64,000 nucleotides of DNA from Macrostomum lignano (Eukaryota), in NCBI GenBank assembly GCA_002269645.1, contig NIVC01000364.1, positions 434,001 through 498,000 on the forward strand. The letters are read 5' to 3'. Below, in pieces: positions 26,388 to 62,512 of the stretch; positions within the stretch are counted from its first letter, which is position 1; the number at the start of each line of letters is the position of its first letter. Made by a program: the position numbers and the translations under genes. The notes under the pieces are model-generated. The model had not been told where the DNA came from and searched no databases. It saw only the letters and a list, made by a program, of their open reading frames with translations.

Positions 26388-26390
<3 letters not shown>
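24651..26390 (+). mobile_element. Internally deleted non-LTR retroelement, Ingi/Vingi-like: 2A peptide, PHD, PHD, AP endonuclease, then C-terminal Cys/His motif; no RT
   Basis: ORF from 24756: LLLRAGDIEPNPGP (DxExNPGP at 24882-24905), two Cys/His PHD-like fingers, IIQWNADG...ITVQESKL...GGGLLCYIR. After a frameshift: ITGDLNLHHPAWGS...ILNTGEHT, then a jump to AQDGAGHC...CRLC...HLWTCPKL*. 15-nt 3' UTR followed by (CAA)n. Confidence 0.85.

Positions 26391-26447
<57 letters not shown>
26391..26447. repeat. (CAA)19: right flank or tail
   Basis: Direct reading. Confidence 0.95.
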
Positions 26448-26449
26448 AA

Positions 26450-26845
26450 TATACAGCCCCGCATATATGGTCACAGTCAGAGCAGGGCGCGTCAGATGGC
26501 GCGCCGCAGAGCCTGAGAGCGGACGAAGTCCGCCCCGTTAATATGGCACCCCAGCGTCGCATAGCAGGCGGTCCACATGTCGACGGTTGGGTCCTACCCC
26601 GCCTGACCGGGCCCTGCAAGGTGAGCAGCAGGACGTCCTAAACAGGTTGGGGGCAGTAGTCCTCGGCCCGGATAACGCGACCCTCCAGTTGAAGTCGCAG
26701 CCGGGGCAAGATGCTGCACGGACGCTGCAGCTTGGCCCGATCGTACAGGGCCTCGGTCCCGACGCTCTCGTCAGCTCGAAAAGCCGCATGCACGGAGCAT
26801 CTCTAAGTGCGCCGAGTCCAACTGCCGCTCTGGCGTAGCCGTCAG
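26450..26845 (-). mobile_element. Degenerate 3' fragment of an RTE-like non-LTR retrotransposon
   Basis: Minus strand reads QPV*DVLLLTLQGPVRRG / RRHVDRLLCDAGVP, matching EPVQEVLLLTLQEPYWRG / RRFVDCLLADAGAP of the copy at 28383-28755. Its 3' end abuts (TTG)n. Confidence 0.7.
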
Positions 26846-26854
26846 CGTTCACGT

Positions 26855-27205
26855 CTCTATACAAAAATAATATTAAATAATAATAATATGTAATAACTGA
26901 ATGCACCTGCTCTTATGGGCAGATGTGGAACCAACAGCTCAGCCGCAGCTATTGCGCGGCGCATCTGAAGGCTGCGCTGCGTACGGCTGTTCAATCCAAG
27001 GACTGGGGGGCGCCACACACACCCTCAATTACTGTACACCAGCTAATGCTGGCACCCATGCATTTTGCAGCTGGGTGAACTGAAGCAATGCAGAGTTAAA
27101 TGTCTTACTCAGTACACCATTTGTTCCGAGTAAGGTCGAGAATCGAACCCCTGACCTTTAAGTCGTGAGTCCGACGCTCTAACCATGCTAGGCCACAAAC
27201 TCCCT
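26855..27205 (-). mobile_element. tRNA-derived SINE, full length
   Basis: Head GTGGCCTAGCATGGTTAGAGCGTCGGACTCACGACTTAAAGGTCAGGGGTTCGATTCTC has A-box and B-box but an unpaired anticodon stem. Central domain GAGTAAGACATTTAACTCTGCATTGCTTCAGTTCACCCAGCTGCAAAATG; (TTA)n-like tail; second copy at 1-165. Confidence 0.8.
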
Positions 27206-28382
27206 CTGTTAGGCATGACCAGCCTATATCACCTGTTATAGGTATAAATTAGGAAGCTAGGATCTCGGTCGCCGATTACAGCACTCGGTATGTACACTGT
27301 AGAATGGCTTGTACAAAATTTTCGGCGTCTATAATTAGACTTAAATCCAAACGCAGTGGATTAGCTTAGCTAATACTGCACAAGCACAGTTCTACAGGGT
27401 ACATGCTCGAATTGAGACCAGTGCTGAGTACTAAGGATTGATTGATATGCTGAGTGTAAAGGATACTCGCGCAGACAACAACAGGACGGCTAGAGAACTT
27501 ACGATCATAGAGCTGTCTATTGATTTTATTGAACAGTTAAACGCAAAGCAAATACTTTAACAGGCGAAAATACTGTGACCTCGGATCGAGGGCGCCGATT
27601 TATAGGCGTCCCAAGCTCGCACGAGTTCATCGGTACAGGAGGCCGCGCGGCCATGCAGTCAATTGCGCAGCAAATCGAACCCCTCATTTTTGGAATGGAG
27701 GCAGCTGGATTTCACGGTCGATTGGACTTGCTCGAACTTTGAGCTATTAATTTTTCTCTCTATGTAAATGTGCTTGTATAATATAGAAATTTTGAGCGAA
27801 TCACTGCGCTTAGCTAAATCGGAGCTAATCTTAGTAAAACAATGATCGCGACGTTGCGTTTCGCTTGAAGAGCCACCAATTTAAAAAAAGCAATATTCAT
27901 TCTTGAAAATATTAATTTGCGAGTACATTATTAATGATAGCTGGAATGTAGCTCGAAAATGGTAAATTTGCATTCTTAAGCCCTAGCTACATCATCAGCT
28001 CTACGAGTATGCGCTCTCACGCAGCCAGCTGTGCTACTTAGCAAACCTTACAAATTTTAATTCGATACGTTTTCGCTGAGCGCCAATTGGAGTTTATGCT
28101 TGATAAGAATAAACCATACCTGGTGGCTGCAGCAATTAATTTTTAAATTGCCTAGCTGATTAACGCTAGATACTCATGCAGCCATGCAGAGACAAACTGT
28201 TTGCCTAGCAATTATAAACACAATGCTCCAGTATGGCTGATTGCGTATTTGCAAATCGTTTAACGAAATCTTTTCGTAGAAATGTTTTACAAAACAAAAT
28301 GCAGATAGAAATTGCATAACAAGTTCCGTCGTAACTTACCTGTACTGTAAATACCACAGTAATAATTGTAACAAGCCAACAA

Positions 28383-28755
28383 CAACAACAGAATACAGTC
28401 AGACTCACAGGGCGCGTTAGCAGTCGGACTCACATGCAGGGCGCGCTTCAAGGCCAGCAGGTCGCGAATGAACGCCACGCCGCCGGCCGAATCCGGGGCG
28501 CCGGCGTCAGCCAGCAGGCAGTCGACGAAACGCCGAGTGCGCGCCTGCCCCCGCCAGTAGGGTTCCTGCAGCGTTAGCAGCAGCACCTCCTGCACCGGCT
28601 CTGGCCAGTACGACTCGGCGCGGATGATGTGGCCTGCCAGCTGGAGTCGCCGACGGCGCAACAGGTCGCTTGGACGAAGCAGGCCGGCGCGGCGATACAA
28701 AGCCGCGTTGGTCACTCGCTCGCAGCTGATCTTGAAGGCGGCACGCAGCAGGGAC
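28383..28755 (-). mobile_element. 5'-truncated RTE-like retrocopy with (GTT)n tail and 14-bp TSD
   Basis: TNAALYRRAGLLRPSDLLRRRRLQLAGHIIRA is typical of the RTE post-RT region. TAACAAGCCAACAA occurs at 28369-28382 and 28756-28769. Confidence 0.85.
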
Positions 28756-30725: not shown

Positions 30726-33700
30726 ATGGCTAGCAGAGGCTCAGCGCTGAGGCCCGGCACAGCCTCCAGATTGAAAACTGCAATGCGCCCGGAGACAAAG
30801 GGCGGCTCCGCAGTTGCCGCAGGAGCCAACGTGCGGGTAAGAATAACTCTTCCACGATTCAGCCTTACGCTTTGTGACCATTGACTTATTGGAATTGCAT
30901 TTTTTCTGCTTTTCTTCCCAAGTTCGAAGATCGGCCCATCACCCAGCAAGGCCTTGGCGGATTGAAGACCGGCGGCAAAGGCCTCCGACGCCAGCACGAG
31001 GACAAGAGCTACTACATCGGCCTGCTGCGCTCCAAGATCAACGAGCTCGCCTCCGAGATTGGCCAGCTGAAGCAGAGCTTCGAAACCATGGAGGAGGAGA
31101 GTAGCAGCTTTGTGCAATACGAGAAGATGGCGGAGACCCTGGCCGGCGACATCAAAGCGCTGCAGGGCGAGCTGGCTGACTACAACACGCTGGTGGACAA
31201 GCTCAACACCGACCAGGATGTGGCCAACATTCAGATGGACTGCGAGGAGCTTCGAGGCCAAAACGAACGAGAAGAACGCGAACTTGAACGCGTGTTCAGC
31301 GAGCGCAAAGAGGCCGAAGCTGCGGTTCGCTCAGTTGAACAGGAGCTGGAGCAGGAGAGGCGCATGGCTGACAGTCTGGTGCAGCAGATGCAGCCGGCGC
31401 AGCAGAGACGCTACCAGCAGTTGAAAGAGGAAAACGGGCAGCTGGCCAAGCAGCTCGAGTCCGGCCAAGAGGAGCTGGAGGAGCTGCGGCGGCGACGCGG
31501 CCACCTGGAGGACGAGCTGGCGCCGAATCCCGTCAAGCAAGAGGCGGTGCGACTTAGCGAGCAGCTGCGCGAGGCTGAAGAGAGGCGGGACGGCCTGCTG
31601 GAGGAGGCCAGGGCGGCCGGGAACCCGCAGCAGGAGCGGGAGAGACTGCTGGCTCAGGTGAGACTTTGAGGGAGACTGCTGGCTCAGGTGAGACTTTGAG
31701 AGAGACTGCTGGCTCAGGTGAGACTTTAGGAGAGACTGCTGGCTCAGGTGAGACTTTAGGAGAGACTGCTGGCTCAGGTGAGACTTTGAGGGAGACTGCT
31801 GGCTCAGGTGAGACTTTGAGAGAGACTGCTGGCTCAGGTGAGACTTTAGGAGAGACTGCTGGCTCAGGTGAGACTTTGGGAGAGACTGCTGGCTCAGGTG
31901 AGACTTTGAGAGAGACTGCTGGCTCAGGTGAGACTTTAAGTGAGAGACTGCTGGCTCGATCAGGTGAGACTTTGAGAGAGACTGCTGGCTCAGGTGAGAC
32001 TTTGAGAGAGACTGCTGGCTCAGGTGAGACTTTAGGAGAGACTGCTGGCTCAGGTGAGACTTTAGGAGAGACTTCTGGCTCAGGTGAGACTTTAGGAGAG
32101 ACTGCTGGCTCAGGTGAGACTTTAGGAGAGACTGCTGGCTCAGGTGAGACTTTGGGAGAGACTGCTGGCTCAGTTGAGACTTTGATGGAGACTGCTGGCT
32201 CAGTTGAGACTTTAAGAGAGACTGCTGGCTCAGGTGAGACTTTGAGGGAGACTGCTGGCTCAGGTGAGATTTTGAGGGAGACTGCTGGCTCAGGTGAGAC
32301 TTTGGAAAAAGATTGAGAGAGACTGCTGGCTCAGGTGAGACTTTGAGAGAGACCGCTGGCTCAGGTGAGACTTTGAGAGAGACTGCTGGCTCAGGTGAGA
32401 CTTTGGAAAAAGATTGAGAGAGACTGCTGGCTCAGGTGAGACTTTGAGAGAGACTGTTGGCTCAGGTGAGACTTTGAGAAAGATTGAGAGTGCTTTTAAG
32501 TGTACATCTGAGAGCCATTGTGCGCATGCCGCATGGAGACTTCCATCTACTGTCCGGCACAGGTAATGATACCAGTATATTTCTCTCCAACAGGTAAAGG
32601 AGGACAACCAAGAGATCGGCACGATGGAACGGCAAACCAGAGAGGCGGTGGAGCGCCTGCAGATGTTGCAGAGCGAGATCCGAGCCACCGAGCAGGACAT
32701 CGAGGACGTGTCCGGTCAGCGGTCGCAGCAGTACAGGGAGCTGCGAAAACGAGAGGAACAAATGGACGAATTTCTCGGCAGCTACGACTCCACATTCTCA
32801 AGCGAGAAGGCCAAACTGAGCGAGCTGGAGCGCCAGGTCGTGGAACTGCTGGACTTCATCACCAGGAGCATGGGCCGCGTGAGCTCGCTGCCATCGGCCA
32901 CCGACTTCCGCTCAATGCAAGACCAGCTGAAGTTCAAAGCCAACGAGAAGGACAAAGCGGACGCGACAGCCGCCAACCTGACTGGCGGCCACGTGAAGGT
33001 GCAGCAGGACCTGCTGAAGATCGACCAGCTGGAGAGGAAAACCACGGAGGAGATTGAATCGCTGAAAGAGCGAATCAAAGCGATGCAGGACGAGCTGGTT
33101 CGCTACGGCGACATTGGCGGCTTGATGGCTGAGAGCGAGGCGAAGAGGGAGTCGGTAAGGCGGGAACACACTCTGGCTTGCTATGCGGCTCTTTCTTCGA
33201 TGTTTTATAAAAAAAGTCAAACGTGTCTATTGTTAGTAGTCTAGTCTGGTTTTTAGCAGATTTATTAAATTGTTTAGGATACCTTGGAATATACAAATGG
33301 GTCTCATGTATATATTGTACAGCATCGTATATGTACGAGATTTGCCCAGCTCAGATGTCAATATTCCATAAGGAGGGTTTGATGGTTAATCAGTGCGAGA
33401 AAGCAGTGAGATAAATGTTAATTACCGAGAAATTTATACGGCTATCAGCCTAGTTGTGTTAGTTGTGTTTTATTAAACGGTTTCATTGTAAACAAAATAA
33501 GTGCTTATTTAAAATGCAGTTTTTTTTCAAATGAACAAATGTACTTATTGATCTTCATCGAATTGAAGGGTATATAAGTAAGGAAAGGTGATTAAGTAAT
33601 TAATAATGCAACTCGCAGCTAGTTGTTGGCACATTTTGAATGAAAAATAATTATTTTGGTTGAATATGAACTACTGTACGATATAGTACTGCCGATAGTA

Positions 33701-39182: not shown

Positions 39183-40535
39183 GTCAGTAGGGGTCAGAAG
39201 CCATAGACTATGATACGATAACGTCAGTAGGGGTCAGAAGCCATTGACTATGCTACGGAAAGGGTCAGAAGGGGTCAGAAGCCATAGACTATGCTACGGA
39301 AAGGGTCAGTAGGTGTCAGAAGCCATAGACTATGCTACGGAAAGGGTCAGTAGTGGTCAGAAGCCATAGACTATGCTACGGAAAGAGTCAGTAGGGGTCA
39401 GAAGCCATAGACTATGCTACGGAAAGGGTCAGTAGGTGTCAGAAGCCATAGACTATGCTACGGAAAGGGTCAGAAGGGGTCAGAAGCCATAGACTATGAT
39501 ACGGGAAAGTCAGTAAAGCTTAGAAGCCATAGACTATGATACGGGAATGTCAGTAGGGGTCAGAAGCCATAGACTATGATGCGGGAATGTCAGTAGGGGT
39601 CAGAAGCCATAGACTATGATGCGGGAATGTCAGTAGGGGTCAGAAGCCATAGACTATGATACGGGAATGTCAGTAGGGGTCAGAAGCCATAGACTATGAT
39701 GCGGGAATGTCAGTAGGGGTCAGAAGCCATAGACTATGATACGGGAATGTCAGTAGGGGTCAGAAGCCATAGACTATGATGCGGGAATGTCAGTAGGGGT
39801 CAGAAGCCATAGACTATAATACGGAAAAGTCAGTAGGGGTCAGAAGCCATAGACTCTGCTACGGAAAGGGTCAGAAGGAGTCAGAAGCTATAGACTATGC
39901 TACAGAGAATGTCATCAGTAAGGGGTCAGAAGCCATAGACTATGATGCGGGAATGTCAGTAGGGGTCAGAAGCCATAGACTATGATGCGGGAATGTCAGT
40001 AGGGGTCAGAAGCCATAGACTAAGCTACGGAAAGGGTCAGAAGGGGTCAGAAGCTATAGACTATGCTACAGAGAATGCCATCAGTAAGGGGTCAGAAGCC
40101 ATAGAAGCCATAGACTATGATACGGGAAAGTCAGTAGGGGTCAGAAGCCATGGACTATGATACGGGAAAGTCAGTAGGGGTCAGAAGCCATGGACTATGC
40201 TACGGGAAAGTCAGTAGGGGTCAGAAGCCATGGACTATGCTACGGGAAAGTCAGTAGGGGTCAGAAGCCATGGACTATGATACGGGAAAGTCAGTAGGGG
40301 TCAGAAGCCATGGACTATGATACGGGAAAGTCAGTAGGGGTCAGAAGCCATAGACTATGATACGGGAAAGTCAGTAGGGGTCAGAAGCCATGGACTATGA
40401 TACGGGAAAGTCAGTAGGGGTCAGAAGCCATGGACTATGATACGGGAAAGTCAGTAGGGGTCAGAAGCCATGGACTATGATACGGGAAAGTCAGTAGGGG
40501 TCAGAAGCCATGGACTATGCAACAGGAAAGTCAGA
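39183..40535. repeat. 40-bp minisatellite, ~33 copies
   Basis: GTCAGTAGGGGTCAGAAGCCATAGACTATGATACGGGAAA and variants. Confidence 0.95.
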
Positions 40536-40872
40536 AAGGGCCATTCGTACTCCTACACATCTACACTCTTACCCCCGCCTACGCGATCTTCTATTTTTAG
40601 GTGTGCCAAAGATGAGTGCCAGTGGCGCCAAACTGGGCTATCGGGTGCACTAAAATAGCGTCTGCTAGCTGTGCAAACATGAGAGCTAATAAAAGAAATC
40701 GTTGCGCTCGTACGAAAAGCCGTACAAATAGTTGGTTAATAACCACGGTAATGTCTGCTGCAGACTATGCTGGTGCGCTGCTAAATTCTACCATTGCGAT
40801 TAAAAAATCATTAGTTTCTTTATTTTTTTATTTATTTGGGAACACAAAAGTTGCTCAAATGTTTCAGAACTC

Positions 40873-49511
<8,639 letters not shown>

Positions 49512-49739
49512 TTCGACAGTTAAAAAACTGGATGAGGCAAAAAGCGCCGAGAGCTGACAGCAAGTGCACAGTTTTATGAGGAAATTTTTCATCCAATAAC
49601 GTCTGTTGAAAGGCTGCATCGTCACGTGATTCGGATCGAACTGGCTGTTGGCTCTCTTGGAAAATTCCCCTGCCAGTTGACAGGTCACTGCCGACATCAG
49701 ATACTCATTTTCTCTCGTTTGTAACCAAGCTATTCTCTC

Positions 49740-49832
49740 TACTAGACTGAGTACAGGCACTCTACTAGACTGAATACAGACACTCTACTAGACTGAGTAC
49801 AGGCACTCTACTAGACTGAGTAGACACTCTAC
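49740..49832. repeat. 23-bp tandem repeat, ~4 copies, upstream of the GPCR start
   Basis: CTCTACTAGACTGAGTACAGGCA. Confidence 0.85.
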
Positions 49833-50279
49833 TTTCATTTGTGCCCCAAAAAATAGGTCTGGTGGGTCATGTAACTTAAGCTTGTTTTCGAGCTCCCAAT
49901 CGGATCTAATTGCCGCATTAAAAATTCAAAGGATGCAAGGCCAACCATGCAATATTGCCATGCAGCGCACTTCTAATGTTTCTCAGACAAGCAAAATGAC
50001 TGCTCAGGTAAATCAGGCGGAAATCACGCAGAACGGCGCGCTCTGCCAGCACGCAACGAGCCATAGATGCACAAATGGGAGTAGATATAATATTCTTACC
50101 TGGCTACTTACAGTAGAGTATGTCAATGACGATCTTTTTAGGGAAGCAGAAAATCAAGCGCAAATTTTATTGGGAACACAAGGCCATAATTAAATTTTAT
50201 ACTAATCAGAGAGGATAAACTGACGAATGTAGGAAATAATCATAGTGATTCAAACACGAGTGAATGAGGAGATTCACAC

Positions 50280-51310
50280 ACTACGGAGTTTCACACACAA
50301 GGGAATTAGGAGATTCACACAAAAGGGAATTAGGAGATTCACACGAGAAAATCAGGAGATTTACACACAAGGGAATTAGGAATTAGGGAATTAAAAGAAG
50401 ATTCAAACATCAGGGAATTAAAAGAAGATTCACAAATCAGGGAATTAAAAGAAGATTCAAACACGAGGGAATTAAAAGAAGATTCACACACCTGGGAATT
50501 AAAAGAAGATTCACACACGAGGGAATTAAAGATTAACACACGAGGGAATTAAAAGAAGATTCACACACGAGGGAATTAAAGATTAACACACGAGGGAATT
50601 AAAAGAAGATTAACACACGAGGAAATTAAAAGAAGATTCACACACGAGGAAATTAAAAGAAGATTCACACACGAGGAAATTAAAAGAAGATTCACACACG
50701 AGGAAATTAAAAGAAGATTCACACACGAGGGAATTAAAAGAAGATTCACACATCAGGGAATTAAAAGAAGATTCACACACCTGGGAATTAAAAGAAGATT
50801 AACACACGAGGAAATTAAAAGAAGATTCAAACATCAGGGAATTAAAAGAAGATTCACACATCAGGGAATTAAAAGAAGATTCAAACATCAGGGAATTAAA
50901 AGAAGATTCACACATCAGGGAATTAAAAGAAGATTCACACACGAGGAAATTAAAAGAAGATTCACACACGAGGGAATTAAAAGAAGATTAACACACGAGG
51001 GAATTAAAAGAAGATTCACACACGAGGAAATTAAAAGAAGATTCACACACAAGGAAATTAAAAGAAGATTCACACACGAGGGAATTAAAAGAAGATTCAC
51101 ACATCAGGGAATTAAAAGAAGATTGACACACCTGGGAATTAAAAGAAGATTAACACACGAGGAAATTAAAAGAAGATTCAAACATCAGGGAATTAAAAGA
51201 AGATTCACACATCAGGGAATTAAAAGAAGATTCAAACATCAGGGAATTAAAAGAAGATTCACACATCAGGGAATTAAAAGAAGATTCACACACGAGGGAA
51301 TTAAAAGAAA
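50280..51310. repeat. 27-bp minisatellite
   Basis: GGGAATTAAAAGAAGATTCACACACGA and variants. Confidence 0.95.
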
Positions 51311-52509
51311 AAGGTTTTCATAAGAAGTTAATCGATTTATTTTTAGAGGACATTTAAGATCGTTTTAAGTTATGCTTTTATCGAATTAGGAAAGCAGAAA
51401 TAGCACTAAACCATGGTTGCTCCTTACCTTTCTAAGAATACATGTATAACAAGGAACACAATAGTTCAACCTTGACACCAAAGCTACAGCCTGGTAGGCC
51501 TTAATTATAAATAATAAGGTTTGATGGTCACGCTACATCAATCTGTTCATCCAAGCTAGGCTGCGACAGAGCACATCCGGCCACTAAGGAAACGCTTCGC
51601 CCCTAAACACAGCTTGCAGCTGCAGCAAGTAAGACTGAAAATAGAAGCTTGCCACAATTAGCAGCAATTTGCGCTTCGATTGACTTCAGCACACGCAGGC
51701 TGGCACATCCGCCAGTATAATCGATAAAGATCATTTATTCTTTTTTTCAATAATAGTCGCGTATAAATGTAGATCAATGCGCCTCTTGAACGGACGCTAT
51801 TTCAGCGCCAGAAATTGCAAAAGCAACAACAAACAACAAGGAAGCCAGACGGGGAAAAACAAGTGTGTACAAGTACAGGGCGAAAAAATATAATTTATGA
51901 AAAAATTCGATTTCTTAAAGTCGTGGGAAAATATAGAAAATAGTCATGGACTAAGACGGTAGGGAAAAATCAAGATGATTACAAAAATATAGCAAAAAAT
52001 AATGAGCGAATGCATCGAATCAATAATTAGTCAATGGACAGAACCCGCACTCATTAGGAGATGGCGAGCCTGCTAAGCATTTGAGCACACAATGCCTATA
52101 AATAAGCAATAAATATAATACTAAAAAAGCCAGCAAAATCAGGTGTAAAAAAAGCCATTTGAATCAGTGGAATAAATATTAATTAAATTCAATCAATTTG
52201 GCAGAACCAAAGCTCGGTTTGGATTCGAATAGTGTGTGCAGGGAAAAATCAGTGCTTTAAATACATACTGATTGGAATATAGAAATTGCCTGAATCAACT
52301 GGAAAGCTGATACAAAGTACTGTCTATATAAATAACAATAAATAACAGCTAAAAGTGCAAGCAGGACAGCAGTTAGCGCGAAAAGTTAAGCCACGGAAGT
52401 TTAAGAATTAGCATATTAGTAAAGAACGGTTCTTGATTGCGTATAAGACGTAGCAAAGCTACGATATGAGAACGAATCGTTAAAAACGTTTAACCAAATC
52501 TAACAGGGA

Positions 52510-53310
52510 TGGGGCAGGGGGTGGCATCTCACTGATGGGTCAAGGATGGGGTGGCATCTCACCGATGGGTCAAGGGTGGGGTAGGGGGTGACACCCCTCT
52601 GATGGATCAAGGATGGGATAGGGGGTGACACCCCTGTGATGGATCAAGGATGGGGTAGTGAGTGACACCACTCTAATGGATCAAGGATGGGGTAGTGAGT
52701 GACACCACTCTAATGGATCAAGGATGGGGTAGTGAGTGACACCACTCTAATGGATCAAGGATAGGTAGGTGGTGGCACCCTTCTGATGGATCAAGGATGG
52801 GGTAGTGAGTGACACCACTCTAATGGATCAAGGATGGGGTAGTGAGTGACACCACTCTAATGGATCAAGGATAGGTAGGTGGTGGCACCCTTCTGATGGA
52901 TCAAGGATGGGGTAGTGAGTGACACCACTCTAATGGATCAAGGATGGGGTAGTGAGTGACACCACTCTAATGGATCAAGGATAGGTAGGTGGTGGCACCC
53001 TTCTGATGGATCAAGGATGGGGTAGTGAGTGACACCACTCTAATGGATCAAGGATAGGTAGGTGGTGGCACCCTTCTGATGGATCAAGGATGGGGTAGTG
53101 AGTGACACCACTCTAATGGATCAAGGATAGGTAGGTGGTGGCACCCTTCTGATGGATCAAGGATGGGGTAGTGAGTGACACCACTCTAATGGATCAAGGA
53201 TAGGTAGGTGGTGGCACCCTTCTGATGGATCAAGGATGGGGTAGTGGGTGACACCTCTAATGGATCAAGGATGGGTAGGTGGTGGCACCCTTCTGATGGA
53301 TCAAGGATGG
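52510..53310. repeat. ~38-39-bp minisatellite with two alternating variants
   Basis: GATGGATCAAGGATGGGGTAGTGAGTGACACCACTCTA and ATGGATCAAGGATAGGTAGGTGGTGGCACCCTTCT. Confidence 0.93.
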
Positions 53311-53470
53311 CGTAGGGACTGACCTTCAATGACCTTCAATGAGTACAGACTTCGGACTCTAGCGCAATGAACAATGAAAATATAAAAACTAAAACTAGAA
53401 GTTACAAGCGCCTCACACTAGCCTGGTCACTGTGCAATGTTTTGAACAAAACCACAAACACTCGATTCAA

Positions 53471-56271
53471 TTAGTTTGCCGAGTTGTCCCGCTTCTTTTT
53501 CTTGGCCGAGTATTCACCAATGAACGAGCCGTCCTCGGTGAAATCGCCCACTAAAGAGTATAAAATGATTTAAGTTTATTATATAATGGAATTATTGCAC
53601 AATATATAGATACAAACAGACAAATGAGCACTCACTGTCGCCCATGTCATCTTTGTAGACGTCCAATTCTCGATCGTCTTGACTCTTGATTGACACACCC
53701 GAGTAGGAATTCAGCGACATTCTTTCAGCCCGAATTGGCGCCTCCTCCGCCGGCTGGTACTCCTTGAAGTGCTCCTCCTTGACCTCCAACTCGGGATGGT
53801 TGCCCTGCTGGCGCTCCTTCTCGTCGACCAAGTAAGTCTGGCCCGAGTCGCGTCTCAGAAGCAGCACCAGGAGTATGATTGCAATTAAAACAATGAGAGC
53901 GGCCAGGGTGATGCCAGCAATGAGACCGGCACTGGCGCTGGCTAGCCCAGCAGCCGGCTGCTCGTCGCTGATCCAATCGAAACCCAGTCTGATGCTTAAA
54001 TCGGCGAGCAAATCAGCCGAGTCAAAGTCGGTGGAGTAAAAGCAGGTAGAATCGGCTCGGCAGTCTCGGTCACCAAATGACACAATAGGCTGGCCGTAGC
54101 GCTCTTTGTGCAAGTTTAGATTAGTAAGCTTCGTACCGGAGGAGTCTTTGTACCCAAAATTAAATACTGGCGTTAAATATTTGTACTTTTGTAGAATCGA
54201 GATGACTTCTTTTTTAGCGTTAGGCAATATTTTAAACAACAAACGGTTCGTCTCGGGATAGAACTTTGATACAGAAATATCCTGTCCATGGATGGTATGA
54301 ATGTTTTCAAGCAGCTCGTTGTCAATCTTAAAATAGGCAAACACTTTGACACCGCTTGCCGCCAACCGACGAGTCATGTCGGGGCTCAAAGAGACTTCAA
54401 AAGTACCGCCAACTTTGTTGGAGCATTTCTGCTCAGAACAAGGCTTAGCAGACGTTCGATTGAAACTTAAAATCGTGGGTCGCTTAAGAAAGATGACATT
54501 GCTGCTGCTCTGGATGTTGTATGATGGTAGGCCAACCTTCTGGGCATCGGCAGGGCTGACAGATGCATCGCACACAAATCGATGAGTGAAGTTCAGATAA
54601 GTTGAAGAATCGGATACAGGCACCCGGGAGATTGTCAGGTTTAGTGTTTTGGTTTCGTTTGTTTTAAGAGTTGACTGGCGAACGGTGGAAACAGAAGAGG
54701 AAAACATCTGATTAAATTGGTCCAGATCGAGCTTTTTCCACTTCTGATCAGCGGTGCCAATGGTGTGAAAGGCTGGAATCACGTCGACTTGGTCCATATT
54801 AGTGTAGTAAACTGTGCAGTTATAAGAGAGAGTCTCGTTTTCAATTGCAAATACTACTTGAGGCAAGTCTCCCGAAACAATTTTGCTGTCGCTATCGTGC
54901 AATCTTGTTAAAAACTGGGGCATGGAGACAATTTTAACGTCAAACTTGAAGCTCTTCCCGCCAGCCTCGCACCTGTATTCACCGGAGTCGTTCTCGAAAA
55001 GCTCAGCTGGAAATTCGATTACATTTCCTGTTCGAGAAATTTTCAGTCCCTGAACATAAGTCCATTCGCTTTGACCGTTGGACACAATTTGTTGGTTGCC
55101 ATGGTAAAATCTAAACACCTGGTTAGGATCGTCACAAATAATTGGACACACTAACGGGGTGTAGTCCATGCCAGCAAATATGCTCACTGATCGAGCCGTG
55201 CCCGAGCCAACAATCGAACATTCAGTGGTTCTTGAACCCATTTGCTTATAATTCACAATAGTAGTAGATATTCTCTGCTTAACCTCATCAACCTTGAAAT
55301 ACGGCTGGCTATGACCAGCAAAAGAAACTAGAGTGCAAATACCGATTTCTTTGGGCGATCCTCGGTCTCTGAAGAAGTTTGATATGGCGGTTGTTAGTCC
55401 ATATTTCGAATAGTACAACCTGCCGTCATCCAAGCTTAATCCAATATGTTTTAACAAATTAATATTATTCTCATTCATCTTTGAGTAGTAGTTAACAAAC
55501 ATAGAGACCAAATGCGACTGGAAATTCTGACAGTCGCCGGCATCGAATTGCAAAATTGCCCCAATGTTTATCTTTGCCTTGATAAAATCCGGAGCTGAAC
55601 GAATCCGATCGACAATCTGCTGGTCGATAAAGGGCACATAAGAGAATGGATCGGCGGTAGTGTTCATCTGGATCATGAAATTGATGGCCGGCACAGTTAA
55701 AAGCGCTTATAAAAGCTGTCAATAATGGCGTCGTTAGACGATGAACTGGGCGATTTGCTAATAGCGTCCAGGTTGTAAACAAACAGACTGTTGGATGTGA
55801 TTGTGCCGACAGGAAATTCAACCCGGATGTACAGTTGAATCTTTTGAGAAAACACGTTATCGTAAGTTTGCATCGAATCCAAAAGTGTAAAATAGAAGTC
55901 AATGCCTTCCTTTCCGCTCACTTTACTAATGGTGAAGGGCATAGTGCCCGGCAATAATTACTCTGCGACTGAACGCTACTAAGAGCGACTTCCTCCGGAG
56001 GACTCGACTCAGTACACCTGTAAACTAGAACCTTGGTGCCAGAGCTGTTGCCAGTATCGCCGCCAACGTTAATCCTGATAATAAGCCGCTTATCTTTGTT
56101 AAGAAAGGCCAACTTGTTGGATACGCCAACTTCCCAGACGTCGTCCCAGGACAGCATAATTTTGTTAGACTGTGAGTACACAAACTGTGGCGACTTCTGC
56201 GCAACACTAACTGCTAGTAGGGCCGCCAGCAGCACGCATAGCCGGCTGAAAGTCTGGCTCCAAGCCATCAT
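53471..56271 (-). CDS. L1CAM/neuroglian-tail single-pass Ig-like membrane protein, paralog 1; exons 53636-56271 (two apparent 1-bp deletions) and 53471-53550; ~905 aa if repaired
   Basis: Signal peptide LCVLLAALLAVSVA; Ig-like motif DSGEYRC; TM IAGITLAALIVLIAIILLVLLL; tail RRDSGQTYLVDEKE...FKEYQ...DDRELDVY...MGD|MGDFTEDGSFIGEYSAKKKKRDNSAN*. Collinear with paralog 2. Confidence 0.8.
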
Positions 56272-58927
56272 GCATCAAAATGGCAAAGGGAGCATTGTGA
56301 AAGGATTCTAAACTTTTAATAAGTCTAAGACAAACATTAAAGTTTCCAGTACAGTAGACATATTGGATTTTCCTACCAAAAGTGGGGGAGCGGCCCTACC
56401 ACAGCAAAAAGTGGGGAGGGGGCAGTGGTGCCAATAAACCTTTCAGGCTTTATGAAGTTTAATAAAATCTAAATTAAAACACTAGAGAAGTTCTCCCAAA
56501 TAAAATTCAGATTTTAAGAATTCTTCGACTTGAAATTTTCGCATTGCAAAAGGCTCAAAATGAATGAACGCGTATTTATTTTTGTTCGCAAATCGATATT
56601 ATAATTTTGCAAAGCGGCGAAAAAATCAGTTATAAACACGACGAGAGAAAACATTTTTTTCGAGGACGCACGAGTGACAGATTTGAGAATTTTGCGTAAC
56701 AAAAATCGGTAAAAAAAAACACGCGGGATTAATTATTAGGAACATGGCGATCGGGTAAGCAGGTATTAGAGCAGTTATTATAAAAAGCATAGAAATATTG
56801 TGAGCTAATGAAGCAAGGAAAGCAGTCAGAATTTACAGCACAAAGAGGTGCAAAGCTGACAAAAAAGTTTAGAGACATGTAACTGCACCGCTGAATGGCA
56901 ATTATTTTACGAAATTAATAATTTTAGGACAGAAAATCAAATAAAACACTGCACTGCACACGGGGTAAGAGTCGGGTGAAGGAAATTTCTCCTGGCCAGT
57001 TTCTGTATTCAAAGCTCCTTGAGCTGACTAGGGCCTAAACTAAAGCTTGCACAACCAGCCGACCTTATGATTATGCATTATAACAAGAATGCTAGGAACA
57101 AGATAACGATCTTGATCTGACCCCTAATGCCCACAGGCAAGCCAGGCCTTATTCTGTAATATCTGCACATGCAGTATGTAGGACCCGCAATCTATGCAGT
57201 CAACAGGCCATCAATTCAGACAAGTTGTACGCATGGCGCATATTTTCCCTAGTTAGTTATATGGGAATACGGCCGCGAAATCTCTCCCAGCTCCTATGGG
57301 ACCAATGCAAATGGAACTTGTTATTGCCTCTCTTGCCGCCTAGATACGTGCTACACCTTCATCTGCTGGCAAGGTACGCTTTCCCATAGGTTAAAAAAAT
57401 AGCAAAAGACCAATTCGGCTGGCTAAATATAACAGGCAGAGGAATGCCGACAGGGGTTAGTATGCCATATATAGAATTCTTAGAAACTAAAATGTTGAAC
57501 AAATTCCAGCTTAAACTAACTAAGCTTGACTAAAGGCGGTATTTTAAAGTAAAAAAATGACAAAAAGTTGATTATTACACAATTAAATGTTGCTTTTAAA
57601 ACAAAAGAAGCAGAAAAAGCAATGAGTAAAGCAGTAAACTTTCTGCAAATAGCAGCCACACAGCTGACTAAATTAAAAATACGTTACTGTAATTCAAAAC
57701 TTACGCAATGTTACTAACAAAAATATTGACAGCTGTGCTTTTACATTAAACTCATTAGGTTAGCTACTCAGGACTAATATATCGGATAAATGAAGAAAAA
57801 AACGGTAACAGACACTGATATGCTGCTTTTGACTAAATGGGAGGAAAAAAAGCAAAAATTGATTGCTGCTTGAAGCAGAAAAAAAGAATTCTAAACACAT
57901 TGTAATGCTACCGTGGAGATTAGAACTTGAAAAAAACACACCTCTTTAAAAAAATAAACGCCCAAATAAAATTGCAACAGCCCGGCTAATCGCGGCGGTT
58001 CTGATTAGTATGAAGATTGAATATTTAATATTTGATCGGGGTTATTTCGAGTAGCCTCACTGCCACCGTTGATATCATTTGCATCAGGCTTAGTAGTATC
58101 AGACCACACAGCTCGGGGGTGATTATTTAGCTTAGGCCCACACAAAACTATAATAAGCTATCTGAAGGCAGAACAGAGCGCATATCGACCGCCCTCCCTC
58201 CTGCCTTCCTTGACCGGCCTTAAACCTTCCTCTCTAAACCTCAGACCGGCCCGCACGCACGCACTGGGCGTGGGCAGAACTAGAGAAAGAGAAAAAATGG
58301 TCAAACCCGCTTCCAAAAATGCATTATGCAGATATATATGGAAGCTGACTTGTGCTAACAAATATCTATATCTATATATATGACTATATTGCTAAACTAA
58401 GACCGAAATGCAAATACAGTTAGAAATGAGCTACAGCTCAGTCATTGAGAGCAACAGAACCGCTAACCTAAGGCTTCATCTGTCTTTTTAGTTTAGATAT
58501 TACTGTTTAATAGACGGAGTTTGCTACTACGGTAGCTGAGGCAGCGATGAGATTGCACACAGGACATAGAAACATATTCTAATACATGTAATCTCTCAGA
58601 TTTTTTGTAAATTTGTTCAAACGGACAAAGTACTGTGATATGCATACAGACAACTAACGTTATGCGAAAACGCTATAAAAAGCAAAGGAAAGGTTGATAC
58701 CATAGTGTATAGCCGCATAACAAGTATAAATATTTTAAACTGAACAAAAAACCTACAGAGGCACAAAGCCAGACAACACACACTGCTAAATATTATAAAA
58801 TATGACACACTAGCAAATCATTACACTAGGCTGGCAATCCAATAAGCTATAGATAAGCTTAACACTACCCTCAGCTGACTGAACAGTTATCCACCTGGCT
58901 GTCTATCGCCACTCTCGTTCTCGCCTT

Positions 58928-61900
58928 TCACACTTGATGAGCGTTGAAGGCGTCGCGTCTACGCGCGTCCGTAGAATAATCGCCGATGAATGAGCCGTCC
59001 TCCACGAACTTTGCTGTAAAAGACAAGGAATTGCAAAGTTTTGAAATCCTAGTATTTCCATCGGATGCTAAAGCTTTCACACTCTCTCAAGGATTTGTCT
59101 CTTCCTTGAATCTCAAGACTTTGCCACCTTTAGCAACTCGGTCTTATGTGTCAGCGGGCCAGGCAGTCACATTAACTTTGTAACTAAACTGGAATCTCGG
59201 CTTGGCTCTGCTCGTGCAATCAACGCCCTTGAGGGCCAACCCCCAAGACACGTTAATTAAAGTGTACATGCCTAACGATAAATAAAGTTAGGGCCGCTGT
59301 ACACTCCTGTGTGTGTGCCTGCTCAGGGGAGTCGGCGGAATGGGAAGTAAGTAATGCCTCTCGCTGATTGTGTGACAATGTCGCTTAAAGTGTGCCAGGA
59401 TGCGCACAGAGAGGATCTCTTTTAGATTCAGAGGATTAAATTTACAATTCAGAGCATCGAGAAGTTCACACTTGATTTATTTGAACTTTTTTATCCCAAA
59501 ATGCCCTCTCATGGCCCCAGATTTGTTTATAATCCAGCACTTAAATAATCTTAACCTGAGTTCGCAATGTTGAGCTTTGTGCTTGGCCCCATTTACACAA
59601 TAGTTGCGCATATGGGCGGAAAGACAGGGCAGAATTAGTCTATAAAATTTATTAACAGGCGCTGTGAGACTGATAAGAGATAAGAGATAAAGGCGGGCTA
59701 AATACTCTTCGTCTCGACAATTTCTTTAGGCTTAAATTCTTTACATGGCAAATGGAGCACTCGGCCAGTCATAACAGCGGGAGCTCATTCATTTTGATCG
59801 CAGTTAGTTTTACGATTCTAGAAATTAGCCTTTTTTGGGATGGAGCTTGACCATATTAGGTTTGCTTTGTCATGAAGATTATGCCAATTAAGTCATGCTA
59901 TGTATCGTACACACTGAACAGTACTTACTGCAGTCTATATCGTCGTTGCCATATTCCTCAAGCTCTTGGTCATCTTTGCTACCAGCAGAGATACTCGAGC
60001 CCACTGACATCTGCCTGGCCTTCAGCGGGCCCTCCTCGGGTCGCTGATACTCTTTGAACTGCTCCTCCTTGGCTTCCTGCTCAGGATGATTGCCCTGCTG
60101 GCGTTCCTTCTCGTCTAGCAAATAGGTCTGACCGGTGTCGCGTCGAAGAAGGAAGACGATGAGTACGGCAATAATTAGCAGTAAAACAATAGCCAATATG
60201 ATTCCCACAATGATGCTAGTGCTGGCAGTCGCCGCATTTTCGCTAACAACAGGCTGACCCTTGAAGTCCAGGCCAAGCATGAGGCCTTGAAGAGTGGTGT
60301 CAGCGTCAAAGTCGGTAGAGTAGAAGCAGAGATCGTCCGCTCGGCAGTCGCGCTTACCAGCAAAAAGTTGGCGCGGGCCGTAGCGCTTCTTGTCAAAAAC
60401 TAGATTGGGCGATTTTGTGCCCTCTTTGTAGCGAAAGTTGAATATTGGTGTCAGCGTCTTGCGCGACTGAAGCTCGGTTAACACCTCAGGCTTTGTTATG
60501 CGATTAACTTTAAAGGAAAGCTTTGTTGTATTCGGATCGTAGGATACTTTTGCCACATCCGGCTGATTAAGCACCTTGACAAAGTCCAAGTAATCATCAT
60601 CAATCTTGAAGTAACCTGTCACGGAAACGCCAATCGCTTTCAAATAGGCGGCAAGTTGAGGCTTCAGTGAAAATTGGAAATACGCCCCATCTGAGGCGGT
60701 GCACGACTGCAAGCTACAGTTCTTTGCCATGCTTATGTCGAAGCTGTTTAGTAGAGGACGGCTCAAAAAGAAAACACTGCTGCCACTCTGCACGCTGTAA
60801 GATGGCATACCAATCTTTTGGGTGTCAGCTGTGCCAACAGTTACGTCACACACGCAACGATGCGTGAAATTCAATCCAGTTGACGGATTTGCTGGCGGAA
60901 CTTTGCCAATATTGAATGTTAGCGTCATCGATTCAAGTTGAGAAACTTTCGGCACAGTTATAACATTGGACACCGGAGTAGCCATTAGACGATTGAAACT
61001 ATCTAAATCGTATTTTTTCCAATTGTTTTCGCCCAAGGCAGCACTGTAAAAGACCGGTAAGACATTTGTAGTTGCAACGTTGGTAAAGTATGCCGTGCAG
61101 TTATAAGATAGTCCTTCGCCTTCCATAGCATACACTGTTGGTGGCAGATTACCAGAAATTTCTGAGCTAGAGCTGCTACCATACGATTTTGACGTAAACT
61201 GCGGCATGGAAATTACTTGCGTGTTAAAGGTGAACCTTGTACCACCAGCGACGCACGTATAGGCACCTGAATGTTTATTGTAAATTATCGGCGGAAACTC
61301 TATTATGTTGCCCGTCTTGGAGATTCGAATCCCATTCACTTCTGTCCAATCGCGCCGCGTATCCGGAACAAGACCCTTATCACCGTGAAAAAATCTGTAC
61401 ACTTGGTTTGGACTGTTGCATATAATGGGACAAACAAGTGGAGTGTAGTCCATACCAGAGAATACTGTGACCGCTTTTTGATTAGTAGAACCGATTATTT
61501 TGCAATTTGAGTTTCGATCTCCAAGTGTCTTGTAGGACAGCTCAGTCTTTGGTATCTTCTGCGCAATAGAGAATGTTTTGTCATAAGGTTGGCCTTGGCC
61601 TGCGAACGATAAAGTTGCGCAAATACCAATCTGAACCGGACTCTTGGAAGAAAAAAAATCAGAGATTATGGAACTGAGACCGTATCGTGAGTAGTGCAAC
61701 AGACCAGTCTCCGTATCCAAATAGATATGCTTAAGTAGATTCTGGTTTCTTTCATCCAATTTTGAGTGATAGTTGACAAAGAGCGACGCCCTTGATATCT
61801 GATAGGACTCGCATGTGCCAGCGTCAAAGTTAAGAATAGCTCCGATGTTAATCTTCGGTTTGAGAAATTCTGGAGCCTCTTTGATTATTTGGCTCATGGC

Positions 61901-62512
61901 AGGATCCAAAAATTCCGTACTATCAAACTCTGTATCCGGCATGTTCTCCGACATTCGCTTCAGAAACTGTTCAGCCCCTGCAGAAAGGAAACGCCTACCA
62001 TCCGGGTTCAGTTTGCCAATGGCATCTAAATTCCATACAAATAGGCTATTGGATTCAAGAACGCCAGACGAATGCTCGATGCGTACTCGCAATTCGATTT
62101 TATCAGAAAAGGCACGCGAGTATGGTAATTTTGACGACAGTAGCGTGAAGTCGAATTCATTTTCGCGCTCGTTTTTAAGCCTCACTGAAAATGGTATAGT
62201 GTCTTTACACTGGACCTCATTTGAGCTGGACTTCAATGATTCCATGTCCATCATTGACTCAACATAATCTCGCCTGCACTTGAACTGTAGAATTCTTCTC
62301 AAGCCAGTACCAACATTTCCTACGACTACGATTTTAATTATTAGCCGTTTGTCAGTGTTCAAAAATGCTAACATGTTTGACGATCCAACTTCCCATGTTT
62401 CTTCCCAGGACAGCATGATCTTGTTGGTCTCGGAGAACATGAATCTTGGCTTTTCATTGGCTGCGAGAGTGGCAGCAATTATGCAGAAGAGGATCAGGTG
62501 TTGATAGTGCAT
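58928..62512 (-). CDS. L1CAM/neuroglian-tail single-pass Ig-like membrane protein, paralog 2; exons 59929-62512 and 58928-59013; 889 aa, intact
   Basis: Signal peptide MHYQHLILFCIIAATLA; HSGAYTC; TM IIVGIILAIVLLLIIAVLIVFLL; tail RRDTGQTYLLDEKE...FKEYQ...DDQELEEYGNDDIDC|TKFVEDGSFIGDYSTDARRRDAFNAHQV*. Phase-1 GT-AG intron. Confidence 0.88.

What the first reader, a model, noticed from the sequence alone, without database searches (positions are those of the whole stretch)
53471..62512. Tandem pair of receptors: L1CAM/neuroglian ankyrin-binding tail on an unrecognised ectodomain
Seen: two same-strand paralogs share signal peptide, TM and a tail of form RRDxGQTYLxDEKE...FKEYQ...DDxELxxY...F(T/V)EDGSFIG(E/D)Y. 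Known: this matches the L1-family cytoplasmic domain (juxtamembrane GGKYxV, FxEY, DDSLxxY, ankyrin-binding FIGQY; Pfam Bravo_FIGEY), which normally sits under 6 Ig + 5 FN3 domains (~1100 aa). Here the ectodomain is only ~760-780 aa. I see at most two Ig-like units (C...DSGEYRC / HSGAYTC, and YNC...FVCD). A ~330-aa N-terminal region and a ~200-aa membrane-proximal region match nothing I recognise, and there is no obvious FN3. The whole ectodomain, TM and most of the tail sit in one ~2.6-kb exon, in a locus otherwise full of introns. Inference: a lineage-specific adhesion or recognition receptor family that kept the ankyrin-spectrin anchor but replaced or remodelled its ectodomain, possibly by retroposition or exon shuffling, and then diversified (ectodomains diverge, tails stay conserved).
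Basis: partly seen in the sequence, partly recalled or inferred. Interest (0 to 1): 0.78.

Follow-up and report, generated by a model that had tools for sequence, protein, structure and literature searches.

The report
Flatworm short L1-like adhesion receptor pair
Two neighbouring genes of the flatworm Macrostomum lignano encode membrane proteins that carry the ankyrin-binding tail of the L1/neuroglian adhesion family under a shortened outer part, which is predicted to be four very divergent immunoglobulin-like domains plus an unidentified small domain; this is a flatworm-specific offshoot of a known family and is already in databases as hypothetical proteins.

Summary
Two minus-strand paralogues (gene A 58928-62512, gene B 53471-56268) each encode signal peptide, a ~750-aa ectodomain, a TM helix and a tail that matches Pfam Bravo_FIGEY well above threshold (59.7 bits, cut-off 23.8). 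No Ig or FN3 model reaches threshold in the ectodomain.

The window is Macrostomum lignano. The same pair is annotated as hypothetical proteins in GCA_002269645.1. In the window copy, gene B carries two 1-nt deletions that break its frame.

An exhaustive profile search with the ectodomain found relatives only in M. lignano: about 7 tail-bearing and 4 tail-less lineages.

The ectodomain is not a new fold. A confident AlphaFold2 model (pLDDT 85.6, pTM 0.78) shows four Ig-like sandwiches. Its best PDB matches are contactin, sidekick, DCC, axonin-1 and Dscam Ig1-4 "horseshoes" (TM 0.45-0.58, versus 0.24 for extended Robo1). An alpha/beta domain and a conserved Cys stalk follow; neither is FN3.

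Retroposition is not supported: a phase-1 intron is conserved, and a paralogue has three introns.

Best reading: a lineage-specific, remodelled L1-type IgSF adhesion receptor linked to ankyrin. It is a new variant of a known kind, of moderate interest, with no functional data.

The parts
62456..62512 (-). Gene A signal peptide (aa 1-19, MHYQHLILFCIIAATLAAN)
   Evidence: Hydrophobic N-terminus read directly from the sequence; ATG at 62512. The allele in L001 starts at the same place.
62030..62455 (-). Gene A domain D1 (aa 20-161): all-beta sandwich of 10 strands with a conserved Cys pair. Occupies the first-Ig position.
   Evidence: AF2 models, block pLDDT 81-93. The D1-D2 model aligns over ~290-320 columns with two-domain Ig chains at E~1e-4. 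No Pfam hit.
61520..62029 (-). Gene A domain D2 (aa 162-331): 7 strands plus helices, one of 15 residues. Invariant Cys pair 64 residues apart. A deviant Ig-like domain in the second position.
   Evidence: DSSP of both models. Invariant C215/C279 in mature numbering in the 18-sequence alignment. Foldseek two-domain alignments.
61196..61519 (-). Gene A domain D3 (aa 332-439): Ig domain with LVCPIIC ... HSGAYTC.
   Evidence: Sub-threshold Ig_2/Ig_3 (E~0.08). Titin-like Ig proteins hit profile positions 417-460. hhalign best match is NrCAM Ig3, residues 282-349, probability 45%, E 2e-4.
60755..61195 (-). Gene A domain D4 (aa 440-586): Ig-like domain with inserts (SYNC ... HRCVCD).
   Evidence: DSSP of the AF2 model. 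Nearly invariant C453/C536.
60410..60754 (-). Gene A domain D5 (aa 587-701): alpha/beta module with order beta-alpha-beta-beta-beta-alpha-beta. Not FN3; fold unidentified.
   Evidence: DSSP, block pLDDT 86-93. No Pfam hit. No PDB sequence hit at E<=10.
60218..60409 (-). Gene A stalk (aa 702-765) with the motif DCRADxxCFYSTDFD, invariant in the tail-bearing paralogues.
   Evidence: Alignment A7.
60143..60217 (-). Gene A transmembrane helix (aa 766-790).
   Evidence: 25 hydrophobic residues followed by RRD.
59929..60142 (-). Gene A cytoplasmic tail, part in exon 1: RDTGQTYLLDEKERQQGNHPE...FKEYQ...DDQELEEYGNDDIDC.
   Evidence: PF13882 match at aa 790-872. Alignment with NrCAM.
59014..59928 (-). 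Gene A intron: 915 nt, phase 1, GTAAGT...ACAG.
   Evidence: Read from the sequence. Same position and phase as in gene B, P0001 and L003.
58928..59013 (-). Gene A last exon: TKFVEDGSFIGDYSTDARRRDAFNAHQV, then stop.
53636..56268 (-). Gene B exon 1 (signal peptide to most of the tail). In this window it is broken by two 1-nt deletions, at about 55952 and 55700.
   Evidence: Three ORF pieces. 99.6% aa identity to P0002 over aa 190-878. Deletions located against L001.
53551..53635 (-). Gene B intron: 85 nt, phase 1, GTGAGT...TTAG.
53471..53550 (-). Gene B last exon: MGDFTEDGSFIGEYSAKKKKRDNSAN, then stop.

Best explanation
These are two tandem paralogues of a Macrostomum (probably flatworm-specific) family of type I membrane glycoproteins. 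The family is a remodelled offshoot of the L1/neuroglian branch of the immunoglobulin superfamily.

Shown here:
- A bona fide L1-type cytoplasmic domain is present. It has the juxtamembrane G..Y..(D/E)EKE, F.EY, DD..L..Y and F.EDGSFIG.Y motifs.
- A single TM helix is present.
- The predicted ectodomain has four Ig-like sandwiches. Their mutual arrangement resembles the Ig1-4 horseshoe of contactin, axonin-1, DCC, Dscam and sidekick.
- One alpha/beta domain and a conserved Cys-containing stalk follow, in place of Ig5-6 and the FN3 repeats.

Inferred:
- The head mediates homophilic or heterophilic cell-cell recognition, as horseshoe heads do in L1-type CAMs.
- The tail recruits ankyrin, and through it spectrin, via the FIG(D/E)Y segment. 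Binding is probably switched by phosphorylation of that tyrosine.
- The juxtamembrane stretch may bind ERM-type linkers.

The family grew by tandem duplication and by the polyploidy of M. lignano. It also has tail-less members, probably GPI-anchored, that keep only domains D1-D4.
For: Tail:
- PF13882 scores 59.7 bits against a cut-off of 23.8, and 56.7-60.9 bits in the paralogues.
- 25 columns are invariant with fish NrCAM, including EKE, F.EY, DD, L..Y and F.EDGSFIG.Y.
- The nearest tails outside the family are metagenome neuroglian-type fragments at 46-49% identity.

Ectodomain:
- The AF2 model has pLDDT 85.6 and pTM 0.78.
- Top Foldseek hits are contactin-2/1 Ig1-6 (E 3e-17), sidekick, CNTN5 Ig1-4 (TMt 0.58), CNTN4 (0.57), axonin-1 (0.55), DCC (0.53) and Dscam (0.46). 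Extended Robo1 Ig1-4 gives 0.24.
- D1-D2 modelled alone (pLDDT 87.5) aligns over ~300 columns with two-domain Ig chains.
- D3 matches NrCAM Ig3 best, which is collinear.
- Conserved Cys pairs occur in each domain.

Family:
- Four further full-length lineages (P0007-P0010) and four tail-less ones (P0011-P0014) cover D1-D4. All are M. lignano.
- Recurrent adjacent pairs exist: PAA58181/58182, PAA46397/46398, PAA81940/81941.
- The same pair is present in GCA_002269645.1.
Against: - Outside D3 there is no sequence-level similarity to any Ig domain or to L1 ectodomains.
- The horseshoe is shared by several IgSF families, so it does not prove descent from L1.
- The domain arrangement is a prediction from 18 paralogues of one species. 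I could not inspect coordinates or query ranges of the Foldseek alignments.
- D1-D2 matches are weak (E~1e-4, TMt 0.3-0.38), and D2 has four helices of 6-15 residues plus a short 4-residue turn at its start, which is unusual for Ig.
- In P0001 the TM and tail lie on separate exons, and tail-less paralogues exist. The tail could therefore have been acquired by exon shuffling.
- There are no expression, localisation or binding data. None of the gene ids appears in the searched literature or in the two supplements checked.
- Some paralogues (P0009, P0010) lack the FIGxY end in their gene models.
Confidence: 0.6

Rival explanations
1. Exon shuffling chimera. An unrelated, flatworm-specific four-domain IgSF surface protein (the D1-D4 unit, as in the tail-less paralogues) captured the TM and tail exons of a canonical neuroglian gene. 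On this reading the ectodomain is not descended from L1 Ig1-4.
For: - Tail-less paralogues P0011-P0014 match only profile positions ~12-583 (D1-D4) and end in a hydrophobic, GPI-signal-like segment.
- In P0001 the D5 end/stalk, the TM plus tail, and the FIGxY end are on separate exons.
- D1, D2, D4 and D5 have no sequence similarity to NrCAM.
- Flatworms are reported to have separate neuroglian orthologues: Smp_176350 in S. mansoni, PMC6743411, and a D. japonica contig with BLAST E 2e-41, PMC3507646.
Against: - The head resembles the horseshoe shared by L1 and its relatives.
- D3 matches NrCAM Ig3 best, in collinear position.
- Loss of the tail, as in contactins relative to L1, explains the tail-less members equally well.
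Confidence: 0.25
2. Not an adhesion molecule but a fast-evolving recognition receptor (self/non-self, gamete or pathogen recognition) that merely uses the L1 tail for cortical anchoring. The expansion and divergence of the ectodomains would reflect diversifying selection.
For: - There are 7 tail-bearing and 4 tail-less lineages in one species, 36-52% identical to gene A among the tail-bearing ones and 19-22% for the tail-less ones.
- Ectodomains are less conserved than tails.
- No detectable relative exists outside Macrostomum in 1.84 billion cluster representatives or in JGI metagenomes.
Against: - The difference in conservation is modest: 41-56% against 59-78%.
- Between the two near-identical copies of gene A, 7 codons differ synonymously and 9 non-synonymously. 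That is no clear excess over neutrality.
- No expression data are available.
Confidence: 0.12
3. In this window only gene A is functional. Gene B is a young pseudogene on this haplotype or homeologue of the polyploid genome.
For: - Two single-base deletions lie in codons 106 and 191. Neither is in a homopolymer. They put the ORF into three frames.
- Gene A has no indel in 2670 nt.
Against: - The rest of gene B is open and differs from the intact public allele by only 7 synonymous and 5 non-synonymous codons.
- Isolated 1-nt deletions are also typical of long-read assembly errors.
- The public assembly has the gene intact.
Confidence: 0.4

Closest known systems
L1 family of IgSF cell-adhesion molecules (L1CAM, CHL1, NrCAM, neurofascin; Drosophila neuroglian; C. 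elegans SAX-7/LAD-1)
   Same: - Type I topology.
- Cytoplasmic domain matching Pfam Bravo_FIGEY, with the juxtamembrane, F.EY, DD..L..Y and F.EDGSFIG.Y motifs.
- Predicted horseshoe-like four-domain Ig head.
- D3 matches NrCAM Ig3 best.
   Different: - Four Ig-like domains instead of six, two of them unrecognisable by sequence.
- No FN3 repeats. An alpha/beta domain plus a Cys stalk takes their place.
- The ectodomain is ~746 aa, against ~1100 by my own knowledge of the canonical family.
- There is no RSLE-type insert.
- The fourth residue of FIGxY is D, E or G.
Contactins / axonin-1 (TAG-1), DCC, Dscam, sidekick: Ig1-4 horseshoe receptors
   Same: They are the best structural matches of the whole-ectodomain model: E 3e-17 to 1e-12, TM-score normalised to target 0.45-0.58. 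The tail-less family members with hydrophobic C-termini parallel the GPI-anchored contactins.
   Different: Sequence identity in the structural alignments is only 8-12%. D1 and D2 are much larger (142 and 170 aa) and carry helices. There are no FN3 repeats. The tail is of L1 type, not DCC/Dscam type.
Deposited M. lignano proteins PAA... BOX15_Mlig011430g1 (P0002), BOX15_Mlig021638g1 (P0001) and the unnamed 890-aa neighbour on NIVC01001207.1
   Same: P0002 is gene B (99.6% aa identity over aa 190-878). The 890-aa product is gene A (16 codon differences). The tandem order is the same.
   Different: The public entries are uncharacterised ('hypothetical protein', or domain-based UniRef names). The window copy of gene B is frame-broken.
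Schistocephalus solidus A0A183SHS7 and the Schistosoma 'Bravo_FIGEY domain-containing protein' (literature only)
   Same: The cestode protein is 915 aa: signal 1-19, outside 20-768, TM 769-792, inside 793-915 (PMC12090676). That is almost the same topology as gene A (889 aa; 1-19, 20-765, 766-790, 791-889).
   Different: I could not obtain the sequences, so homology of the ectodomains is untested. The ectodomain profile did not reach them at E<=0.001.

Membership tests
L1 family (L1CAM/NrCAM/neurofascin/CHL1/neuroglian) | Conserved cytoplasmic domain (Pfam PF13882 Bravo_FIGEY) | tested here: met
   59.7 bits, E 6.4e-16, cut-off 23.8 for gene A. 60.9 and 56.7 bits for P0001 and P0002. 9 of 18 family members match.
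L1 family (L1CAM/NrCAM/neurofascin/CHL1/neuroglian) | Ankyrin-binding segment: DD..L..Y followed by F.EDGSFIGxY | tested here: met
   KDDQELEEY...FVEDGSFIGDY in gene A and QDDRELDVY...FTEDGSFIGEY in gene B. The columns are invariant with NrCAM.
L1 family (L1CAM/NrCAM/neurofascin/CHL1/neuroglian) | Six N-terminal Ig domains | tested here: not met
   The model has four Ig-like sandwiches, D1-D4. Pfam finds none above threshold.
L1 family (L1CAM/NrCAM/neurofascin/CHL1/neuroglian) | Three to five membrane-proximal FN3 repeats | tested here: not met
   No FN3 hit at E<=10 in any of 18 members. The membrane-proximal domain has two 9-residue helices in a beta-alpha-beta-beta-beta-alpha-beta order.
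L1 family (L1CAM/NrCAM/neurofascin/CHL1/neuroglian) | Single-pass type I membrane topology with signal peptide | tested here: met
   Read from the sequence: hydrophobic aa 1-19 and 766-790, with RRD after the TM.
L1 family (L1CAM/NrCAM/neurofascin/CHL1/neuroglian) | Physical binding of ankyrin, regulated by FIGQY tyrosine phosphorylation | not testable with these tools
   Needs pull-down or recruitment assays.
Horseshoe IgSF receptors (L1, contactin, axonin-1, DCC, Dscam, sidekick, hemolin) | Ig1-4 fold back so that Ig1 packs on Ig4 and Ig2 on Ig3 | tested here: inconclusive
   TM-scores to horseshoe structures are 0.45-0.58, against 0.24 for extended Robo1 Ig1-4. The model's pTM is 0.78. I could not inspect coordinates or contacts, and this is a prediction.
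   Both genes keep a phase-1 intron before (K/G)F.EDGSFIG. It lies at the same place in P0001, which has three introns, and in the environmental relative L003.
SEA-like / ferredoxin-like juxtamembrane modules (considered for D5) | beta-alpha-beta-beta-alpha-beta sandwich with matches to solved SEA-type domains | not tested
   Only the order of secondary-structure elements is known. The sequence searches are empty.

The most novel reading that the evidence does not exclude
A flatworm-wide family of 'short L1' receptors, including surface proteins of tapeworms and flukes. In these, the ancestral Ig5-6 and all FN3 repeats of neuroglian were replaced by a previously undescribed alpha/beta juxtamembrane domain and a Cys stalk. 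The first two Ig domains were rebuilt beyond sequence recognition. The ankyrin-binding tail was kept.
Probability: 0.35. Interest if true: 0.55.

Novelty: new variant of a known kind. Interest (0 to 1): 0.38.

Why it matters
The L1 family is usually treated as architecturally invariant from worms to man (six Ig domains, FN3 repeats, FIGQY tail). This family would show that the ankyrin-coupling tail can operate under a much reduced and remodelled head.

It also gives flatworm biology a set of candidate adhesion or recognition receptors: about 11 lineages in one species.

If the cestode and schistosome 'Bravo_FIGEY' proteins of the same size are orthologues, the family would include exposed membrane proteins of parasites.

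At present this is a bioinformatic description of already deposited hypothetical proteins, with no functional evidence.

Tried and rejected
- **Pfam on the whole protein, three sub-pieces and all 18 family members.** Only the tail passes. Ig_2/Ig_3 stay sub-threshold.
- **PDB sequence searches.** The ectodomain profile gave only obscurin Ig at E~0.8. The D5-plus-stalk profile gave nothing at E<=10.
- **hhalign of the six segments against each other.** No internal repeat.
- **hhalign against fish NrCAM.** Only D3 matched, to Ig3, and weakly.
- **Word-indexed protein searches were erratic.** The full-length query missed P0007-P0010. The TM-plus-tail profile returned only short fragments. The tail-only profile returned one hit. 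I therefore could not retrieve a canonical M. lignano neuroglian or the parasite proteins.
- **Two metagenome scans**, with an ectodomain profile and a stalk profile: no relatives.
- **Literature.** Nothing on these genes. Gene ids are absent from the supplements of two M. lignano expression papers.
- **Retroposition:** rejected because of the conserved intron.
- **Tiny introns as the cause of the gene B frame changes:** rejected, because the public allele simply has one extra base at each site.
- **Schistosoma primer sequences from PMC12949596.** I translated them by eye. One frame reads LDGRYGP, reminiscent of the family's LDK.RYG.P stalk motif. That is too short to count as evidence.
Full report
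**What is there**

Both genes lie on the minus strand.

Gene A starts at 62512. One 2584-nt exon (to 59929) encodes the signal peptide, the whole ectodomain, the TM helix and most of the tail. After a 915-nt phase-1 intron, a last exon (59013-58928) encodes TKFVEDGSFIGDYSTDARRRDAFNAHQV. The product is 889 aa: signal 1-19, ectodomain 20-765, TM 766-790, tail 791-889.

Gene B (56268-53471) has the same layout with an 85-nt phase-1 intron at the homologous codon. It ends in ...FTEDGSFIGEYSAKKKKRDNSAN.

**The tail**

Pfam Bravo_FIGEY (PF13882) matches gene A at E 6.4e-16, 59.7 bits against a cut-off of 23.8. The M. lignano paralogues score 56.7-60.9 bits.

In an alignment with a fish NrCAM, 25 columns are invariant. 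They include the juxtamembrane R..G..Y..EKE, F.EY, DD, L..Y and F.EDGSFIG.Y. From established knowledge of the L1 family, the last two blocks form the ankyrin-binding segment, and its tyrosine is the phospho-switch. That function is inferred here, not shown.

The closest tails outside the family are metagenome fragments of neuroglian type (KGDSYPVDEKER.NGNDPEKE...FNEDGSFIGQY) at 46-49% identity.

**Organism and public status**

Gene B is 99.6% identical at the protein level to P0002, Macrostomum lignano BOX15_Mlig011430g1. The contig that encodes P0002 is GCA_002269645.1 NIVC01001207.1. It is collinear with window 43.5-63.1 kb at 95-99% nucleotide identity. It carries the same tandem pair, both called as genes with Bravo_FIGEY as their only Pfam hit. 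So the window is M. lignano, and the proteins are already deposited as uncharacterised entries.

Gene A differs from the public copy by 7 synonymous and 9 non-synonymous codons and no indel.

Gene B differs by 7 synonymous and 5 non-synonymous codons, plus two single-base deletions in codons 106 and 191 (window ~55952 and ~55700). Neither deletion is in a homopolymer. As assembled, the window copy of gene B is therefore frame-broken. Whether this is a young pseudogene on one haplotype or homeologue of this polyploid genome, or an assembly error, cannot be decided without reads.

**How wide is the family**

I ran a profile of the ectodomain alone (three sequences) against 1.84 billion cluster representatives. 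It found:

- four more full-length lineages (P0007-P0010, E 1e-240 to 1e-165);
- four distant lineages of 530-720 aa (P0011-P0014, E 1e-39 to 1e-18). These match only the first ~580 profile positions and end in a hydrophobic segment without a tail;
- otherwise only giant titin-like proteins, which hit the Ig F-strand motif.

Every true relative is M. lignano. Several are adjacent pairs on their contigs (PAA58181/58182, PAA46397/46398, PAA81940/81941), so tandem pairs recur.

One environmental contig (ENA ERZ25070786, L003) encodes a stalk-TM-tail exon 45-51% identical to P0001 and P0002, with the same phase-1 donor. At least one other organism therefore has the family. Two scans of JGI metagenomes found nothing.

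Literature lead: a Schistocephalus solidus protein named 'Bravo_FIGEY domain-containing protein' (A0A183SHS7) is 915 aa, with signal 1-19, outside 20-768 and TM 769-792. That is almost the topology of gene A (PMC12090676). A Schistosoma protein of the same name serves as a genotyping marker (PMC12949596). I could not obtain those sequences, so this stays a lead.

Separate neuroglian orthologues are reported in S. mansoni (Smp_176350, PMC6743411) and Dugesia japonica (PMC3507646).

**What the ectodomain is**

By sequence it is almost blank:

- no Ig or FN3 model passes;
- PDB sequence searches give nothing useful;
- the segments do not resemble each other.

By predicted structure it is not blank. 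An AlphaFold2 model from an 18-sequence family alignment has mean pLDDT 85.6 and pTM 0.78. In mature numbering it shows:

| Segment | Residues | Description |
|---|---|---|
| D1 | 1-141 | all-beta, 10 strands |
| D2 | 144-305 | 7 strands plus helices, one of 15 residues; invariant Cys pair 64 residues apart |
| D3 | 318-420 | classical Ig, ...HSGAYTC |
| D4 | 421-565 | Ig-like with inserts |
| D5 | 570-680 | order beta-alpha-beta-beta-beta-alpha-beta |
| Stalk | 685-741 | carries DCRADxxCFYSTDFD, invariant in seven paralogues |

Foldseek against the PDB puts contactin-2 and contactin-1 Ig1-6 (E 3e-17) and sidekick Ig1-5 first. Target-normalised TM-scores for Ig1-4 structures are:

- CNTN5 0.58
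- CNTN4 0.57
- axonin-1 0.55
- DCC 0.53
- Dscam 0.46
- extended Robo1 Ig1-4 0.24

Titin triplets give about 0.29.

The ~575 aligned columns for 380-residue targets fit D1-D4 (565 residues) against Ig1-4. This is my inference; the tool gives no query ranges.

D1-D2 modelled alone (pLDDT 87.5, pTM 0.83) aligns over ~290-320 columns with two-domain Ig chains: Fab and TCR chains, LAR Ig1-2 and the transglutaminase beta-barrels. The matches are weak (E ~1e-4, TMt 0.3-0.38). These are Ig-like sandwiches, but far from any solved one.

In a profile comparison with NrCAM, D3 matches Ig3 best (residues 282-349, between Cys284 and Cys332; probability 45%, E 2e-4). That is collinear but weak.

D5 and the stalk remain unidentified. 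They are clearly not FN3 by secondary structure.

**Gene structure and origin**

The long first exon is a family trait, not a sign of retroposition:

- P0001 has a 2-kb first exon (aa 1-677) plus three further exons: aa 677-763, 759-869 and 869-896;
- the last phase-1 intron is shared by gene A, gene B, P0001 and the environmental relative.

The two window genes lack two introns that P0001 has.

Two origins remain open. The tail may have been inherited from an L1-like ancestor together with a horseshoe head, or it may have been captured by exon shuffling. The tail-less D1-D4 members and the exon layout keep shuffling alive. The horseshoe resemblance and the D3-Ig3 match favour divergence.

Tails are better conserved than ectodomain segments (59-78% against 41-56% identity). 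The contrast is modest.

**Verdict**

This is a lineage-specific, remodelled L1-type IgSF receptor family: four divergent Ig-like domains in a probable horseshoe, an unidentified alpha/beta juxtamembrane domain, a conserved stalk, and an L1 ankyrin-binding tail.

It fails two defining features of the L1 family, six Ig domains and FN3 repeats. I therefore do not file it as an L1 family member proper. It most likely works like one: cell-surface recognition coupled to ankyrin-spectrin.

It is a new variant of a known kind, already present in databases as hypothetical proteins, with no functional data. Interest is moderate.

Noticed in passing
window 55690-55960 (minus strand): The window copy of gene B lacks one base at ~55952 (TTGTCCGGG becomes TTGCCGGG) and one at ~55700 (CTTTCTAAC becomes CTTTTAAC) relative to GCA_002269645.1. 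The ORF is put into three frames. Neither site is a homopolymer.
   Followed up: partly
window 43831-44472 (minus strand), probably further exons up to ~49760: An exon of a class C GPCR (Pfam 7tm_3, E 2.4e-23) lies directly downstream of gene B on the same strand. Its introns are full of minisatellites.
   Followed up: partly
window 18016-19149 (minus strand): An intact-looking 377-aa mariner/Mos1-type transposase ORF (Transposase_1 E 4e-22, DDE_3, HTH_48).
   Followed up: partly
window 24756-28715: A LINE-like retroelement remnant: a 406-aa ORF with weak endonuclease (Exo_endo_phos) and PHD-like hits. GC content is 50-54%, against 32-36% for the flank at 20-24 kb.
   Followed up: no
window 30881-33244 (plus strand): Coiled-coil gene exons. 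They are interrupted by, or fused with, a repeat encoding GETLRETAGS units (31666-32316). No specific Pfam family was found.
   Followed up: no
window 40103-53323: A dense run of mini- and microsatellites. Examples: (ATG)n 41008-41765, (GTA)n 45345-45742, (GATA)n 46168-46950, a 27-nt unit at 50385-51309, and a 37/73-nt unit at 52564-53323 that ends about 150 nt beyond the stop codon of gene B. Copy numbers differ from the public assembly.
   Followed up: partly
P0011-P0014 (M. lignano PAA91929, PAA72301, PAA81941, UniRef A0A1I8G5H4): Distant paralogues keep only domains D1-D4 and end in a hydrophobic C-terminus, like a GPI signal. This resembles the contactin-versus-L1 relationship.
   Followed up: partly
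L003 5038-5595 (ENA ERZ25070786 ctg142120l): An environmental contig with a stalk-TM-tail exon of this family (IIFYSSEEDP...TRDRGETYIIDEKERAQGHNPEQE...DEYGEIDAG) and the same phase-1 donor. It is embedded in retrotransposon-rich DNA. The organism is unknown.
   Followed up: partly
   Followed up: partly
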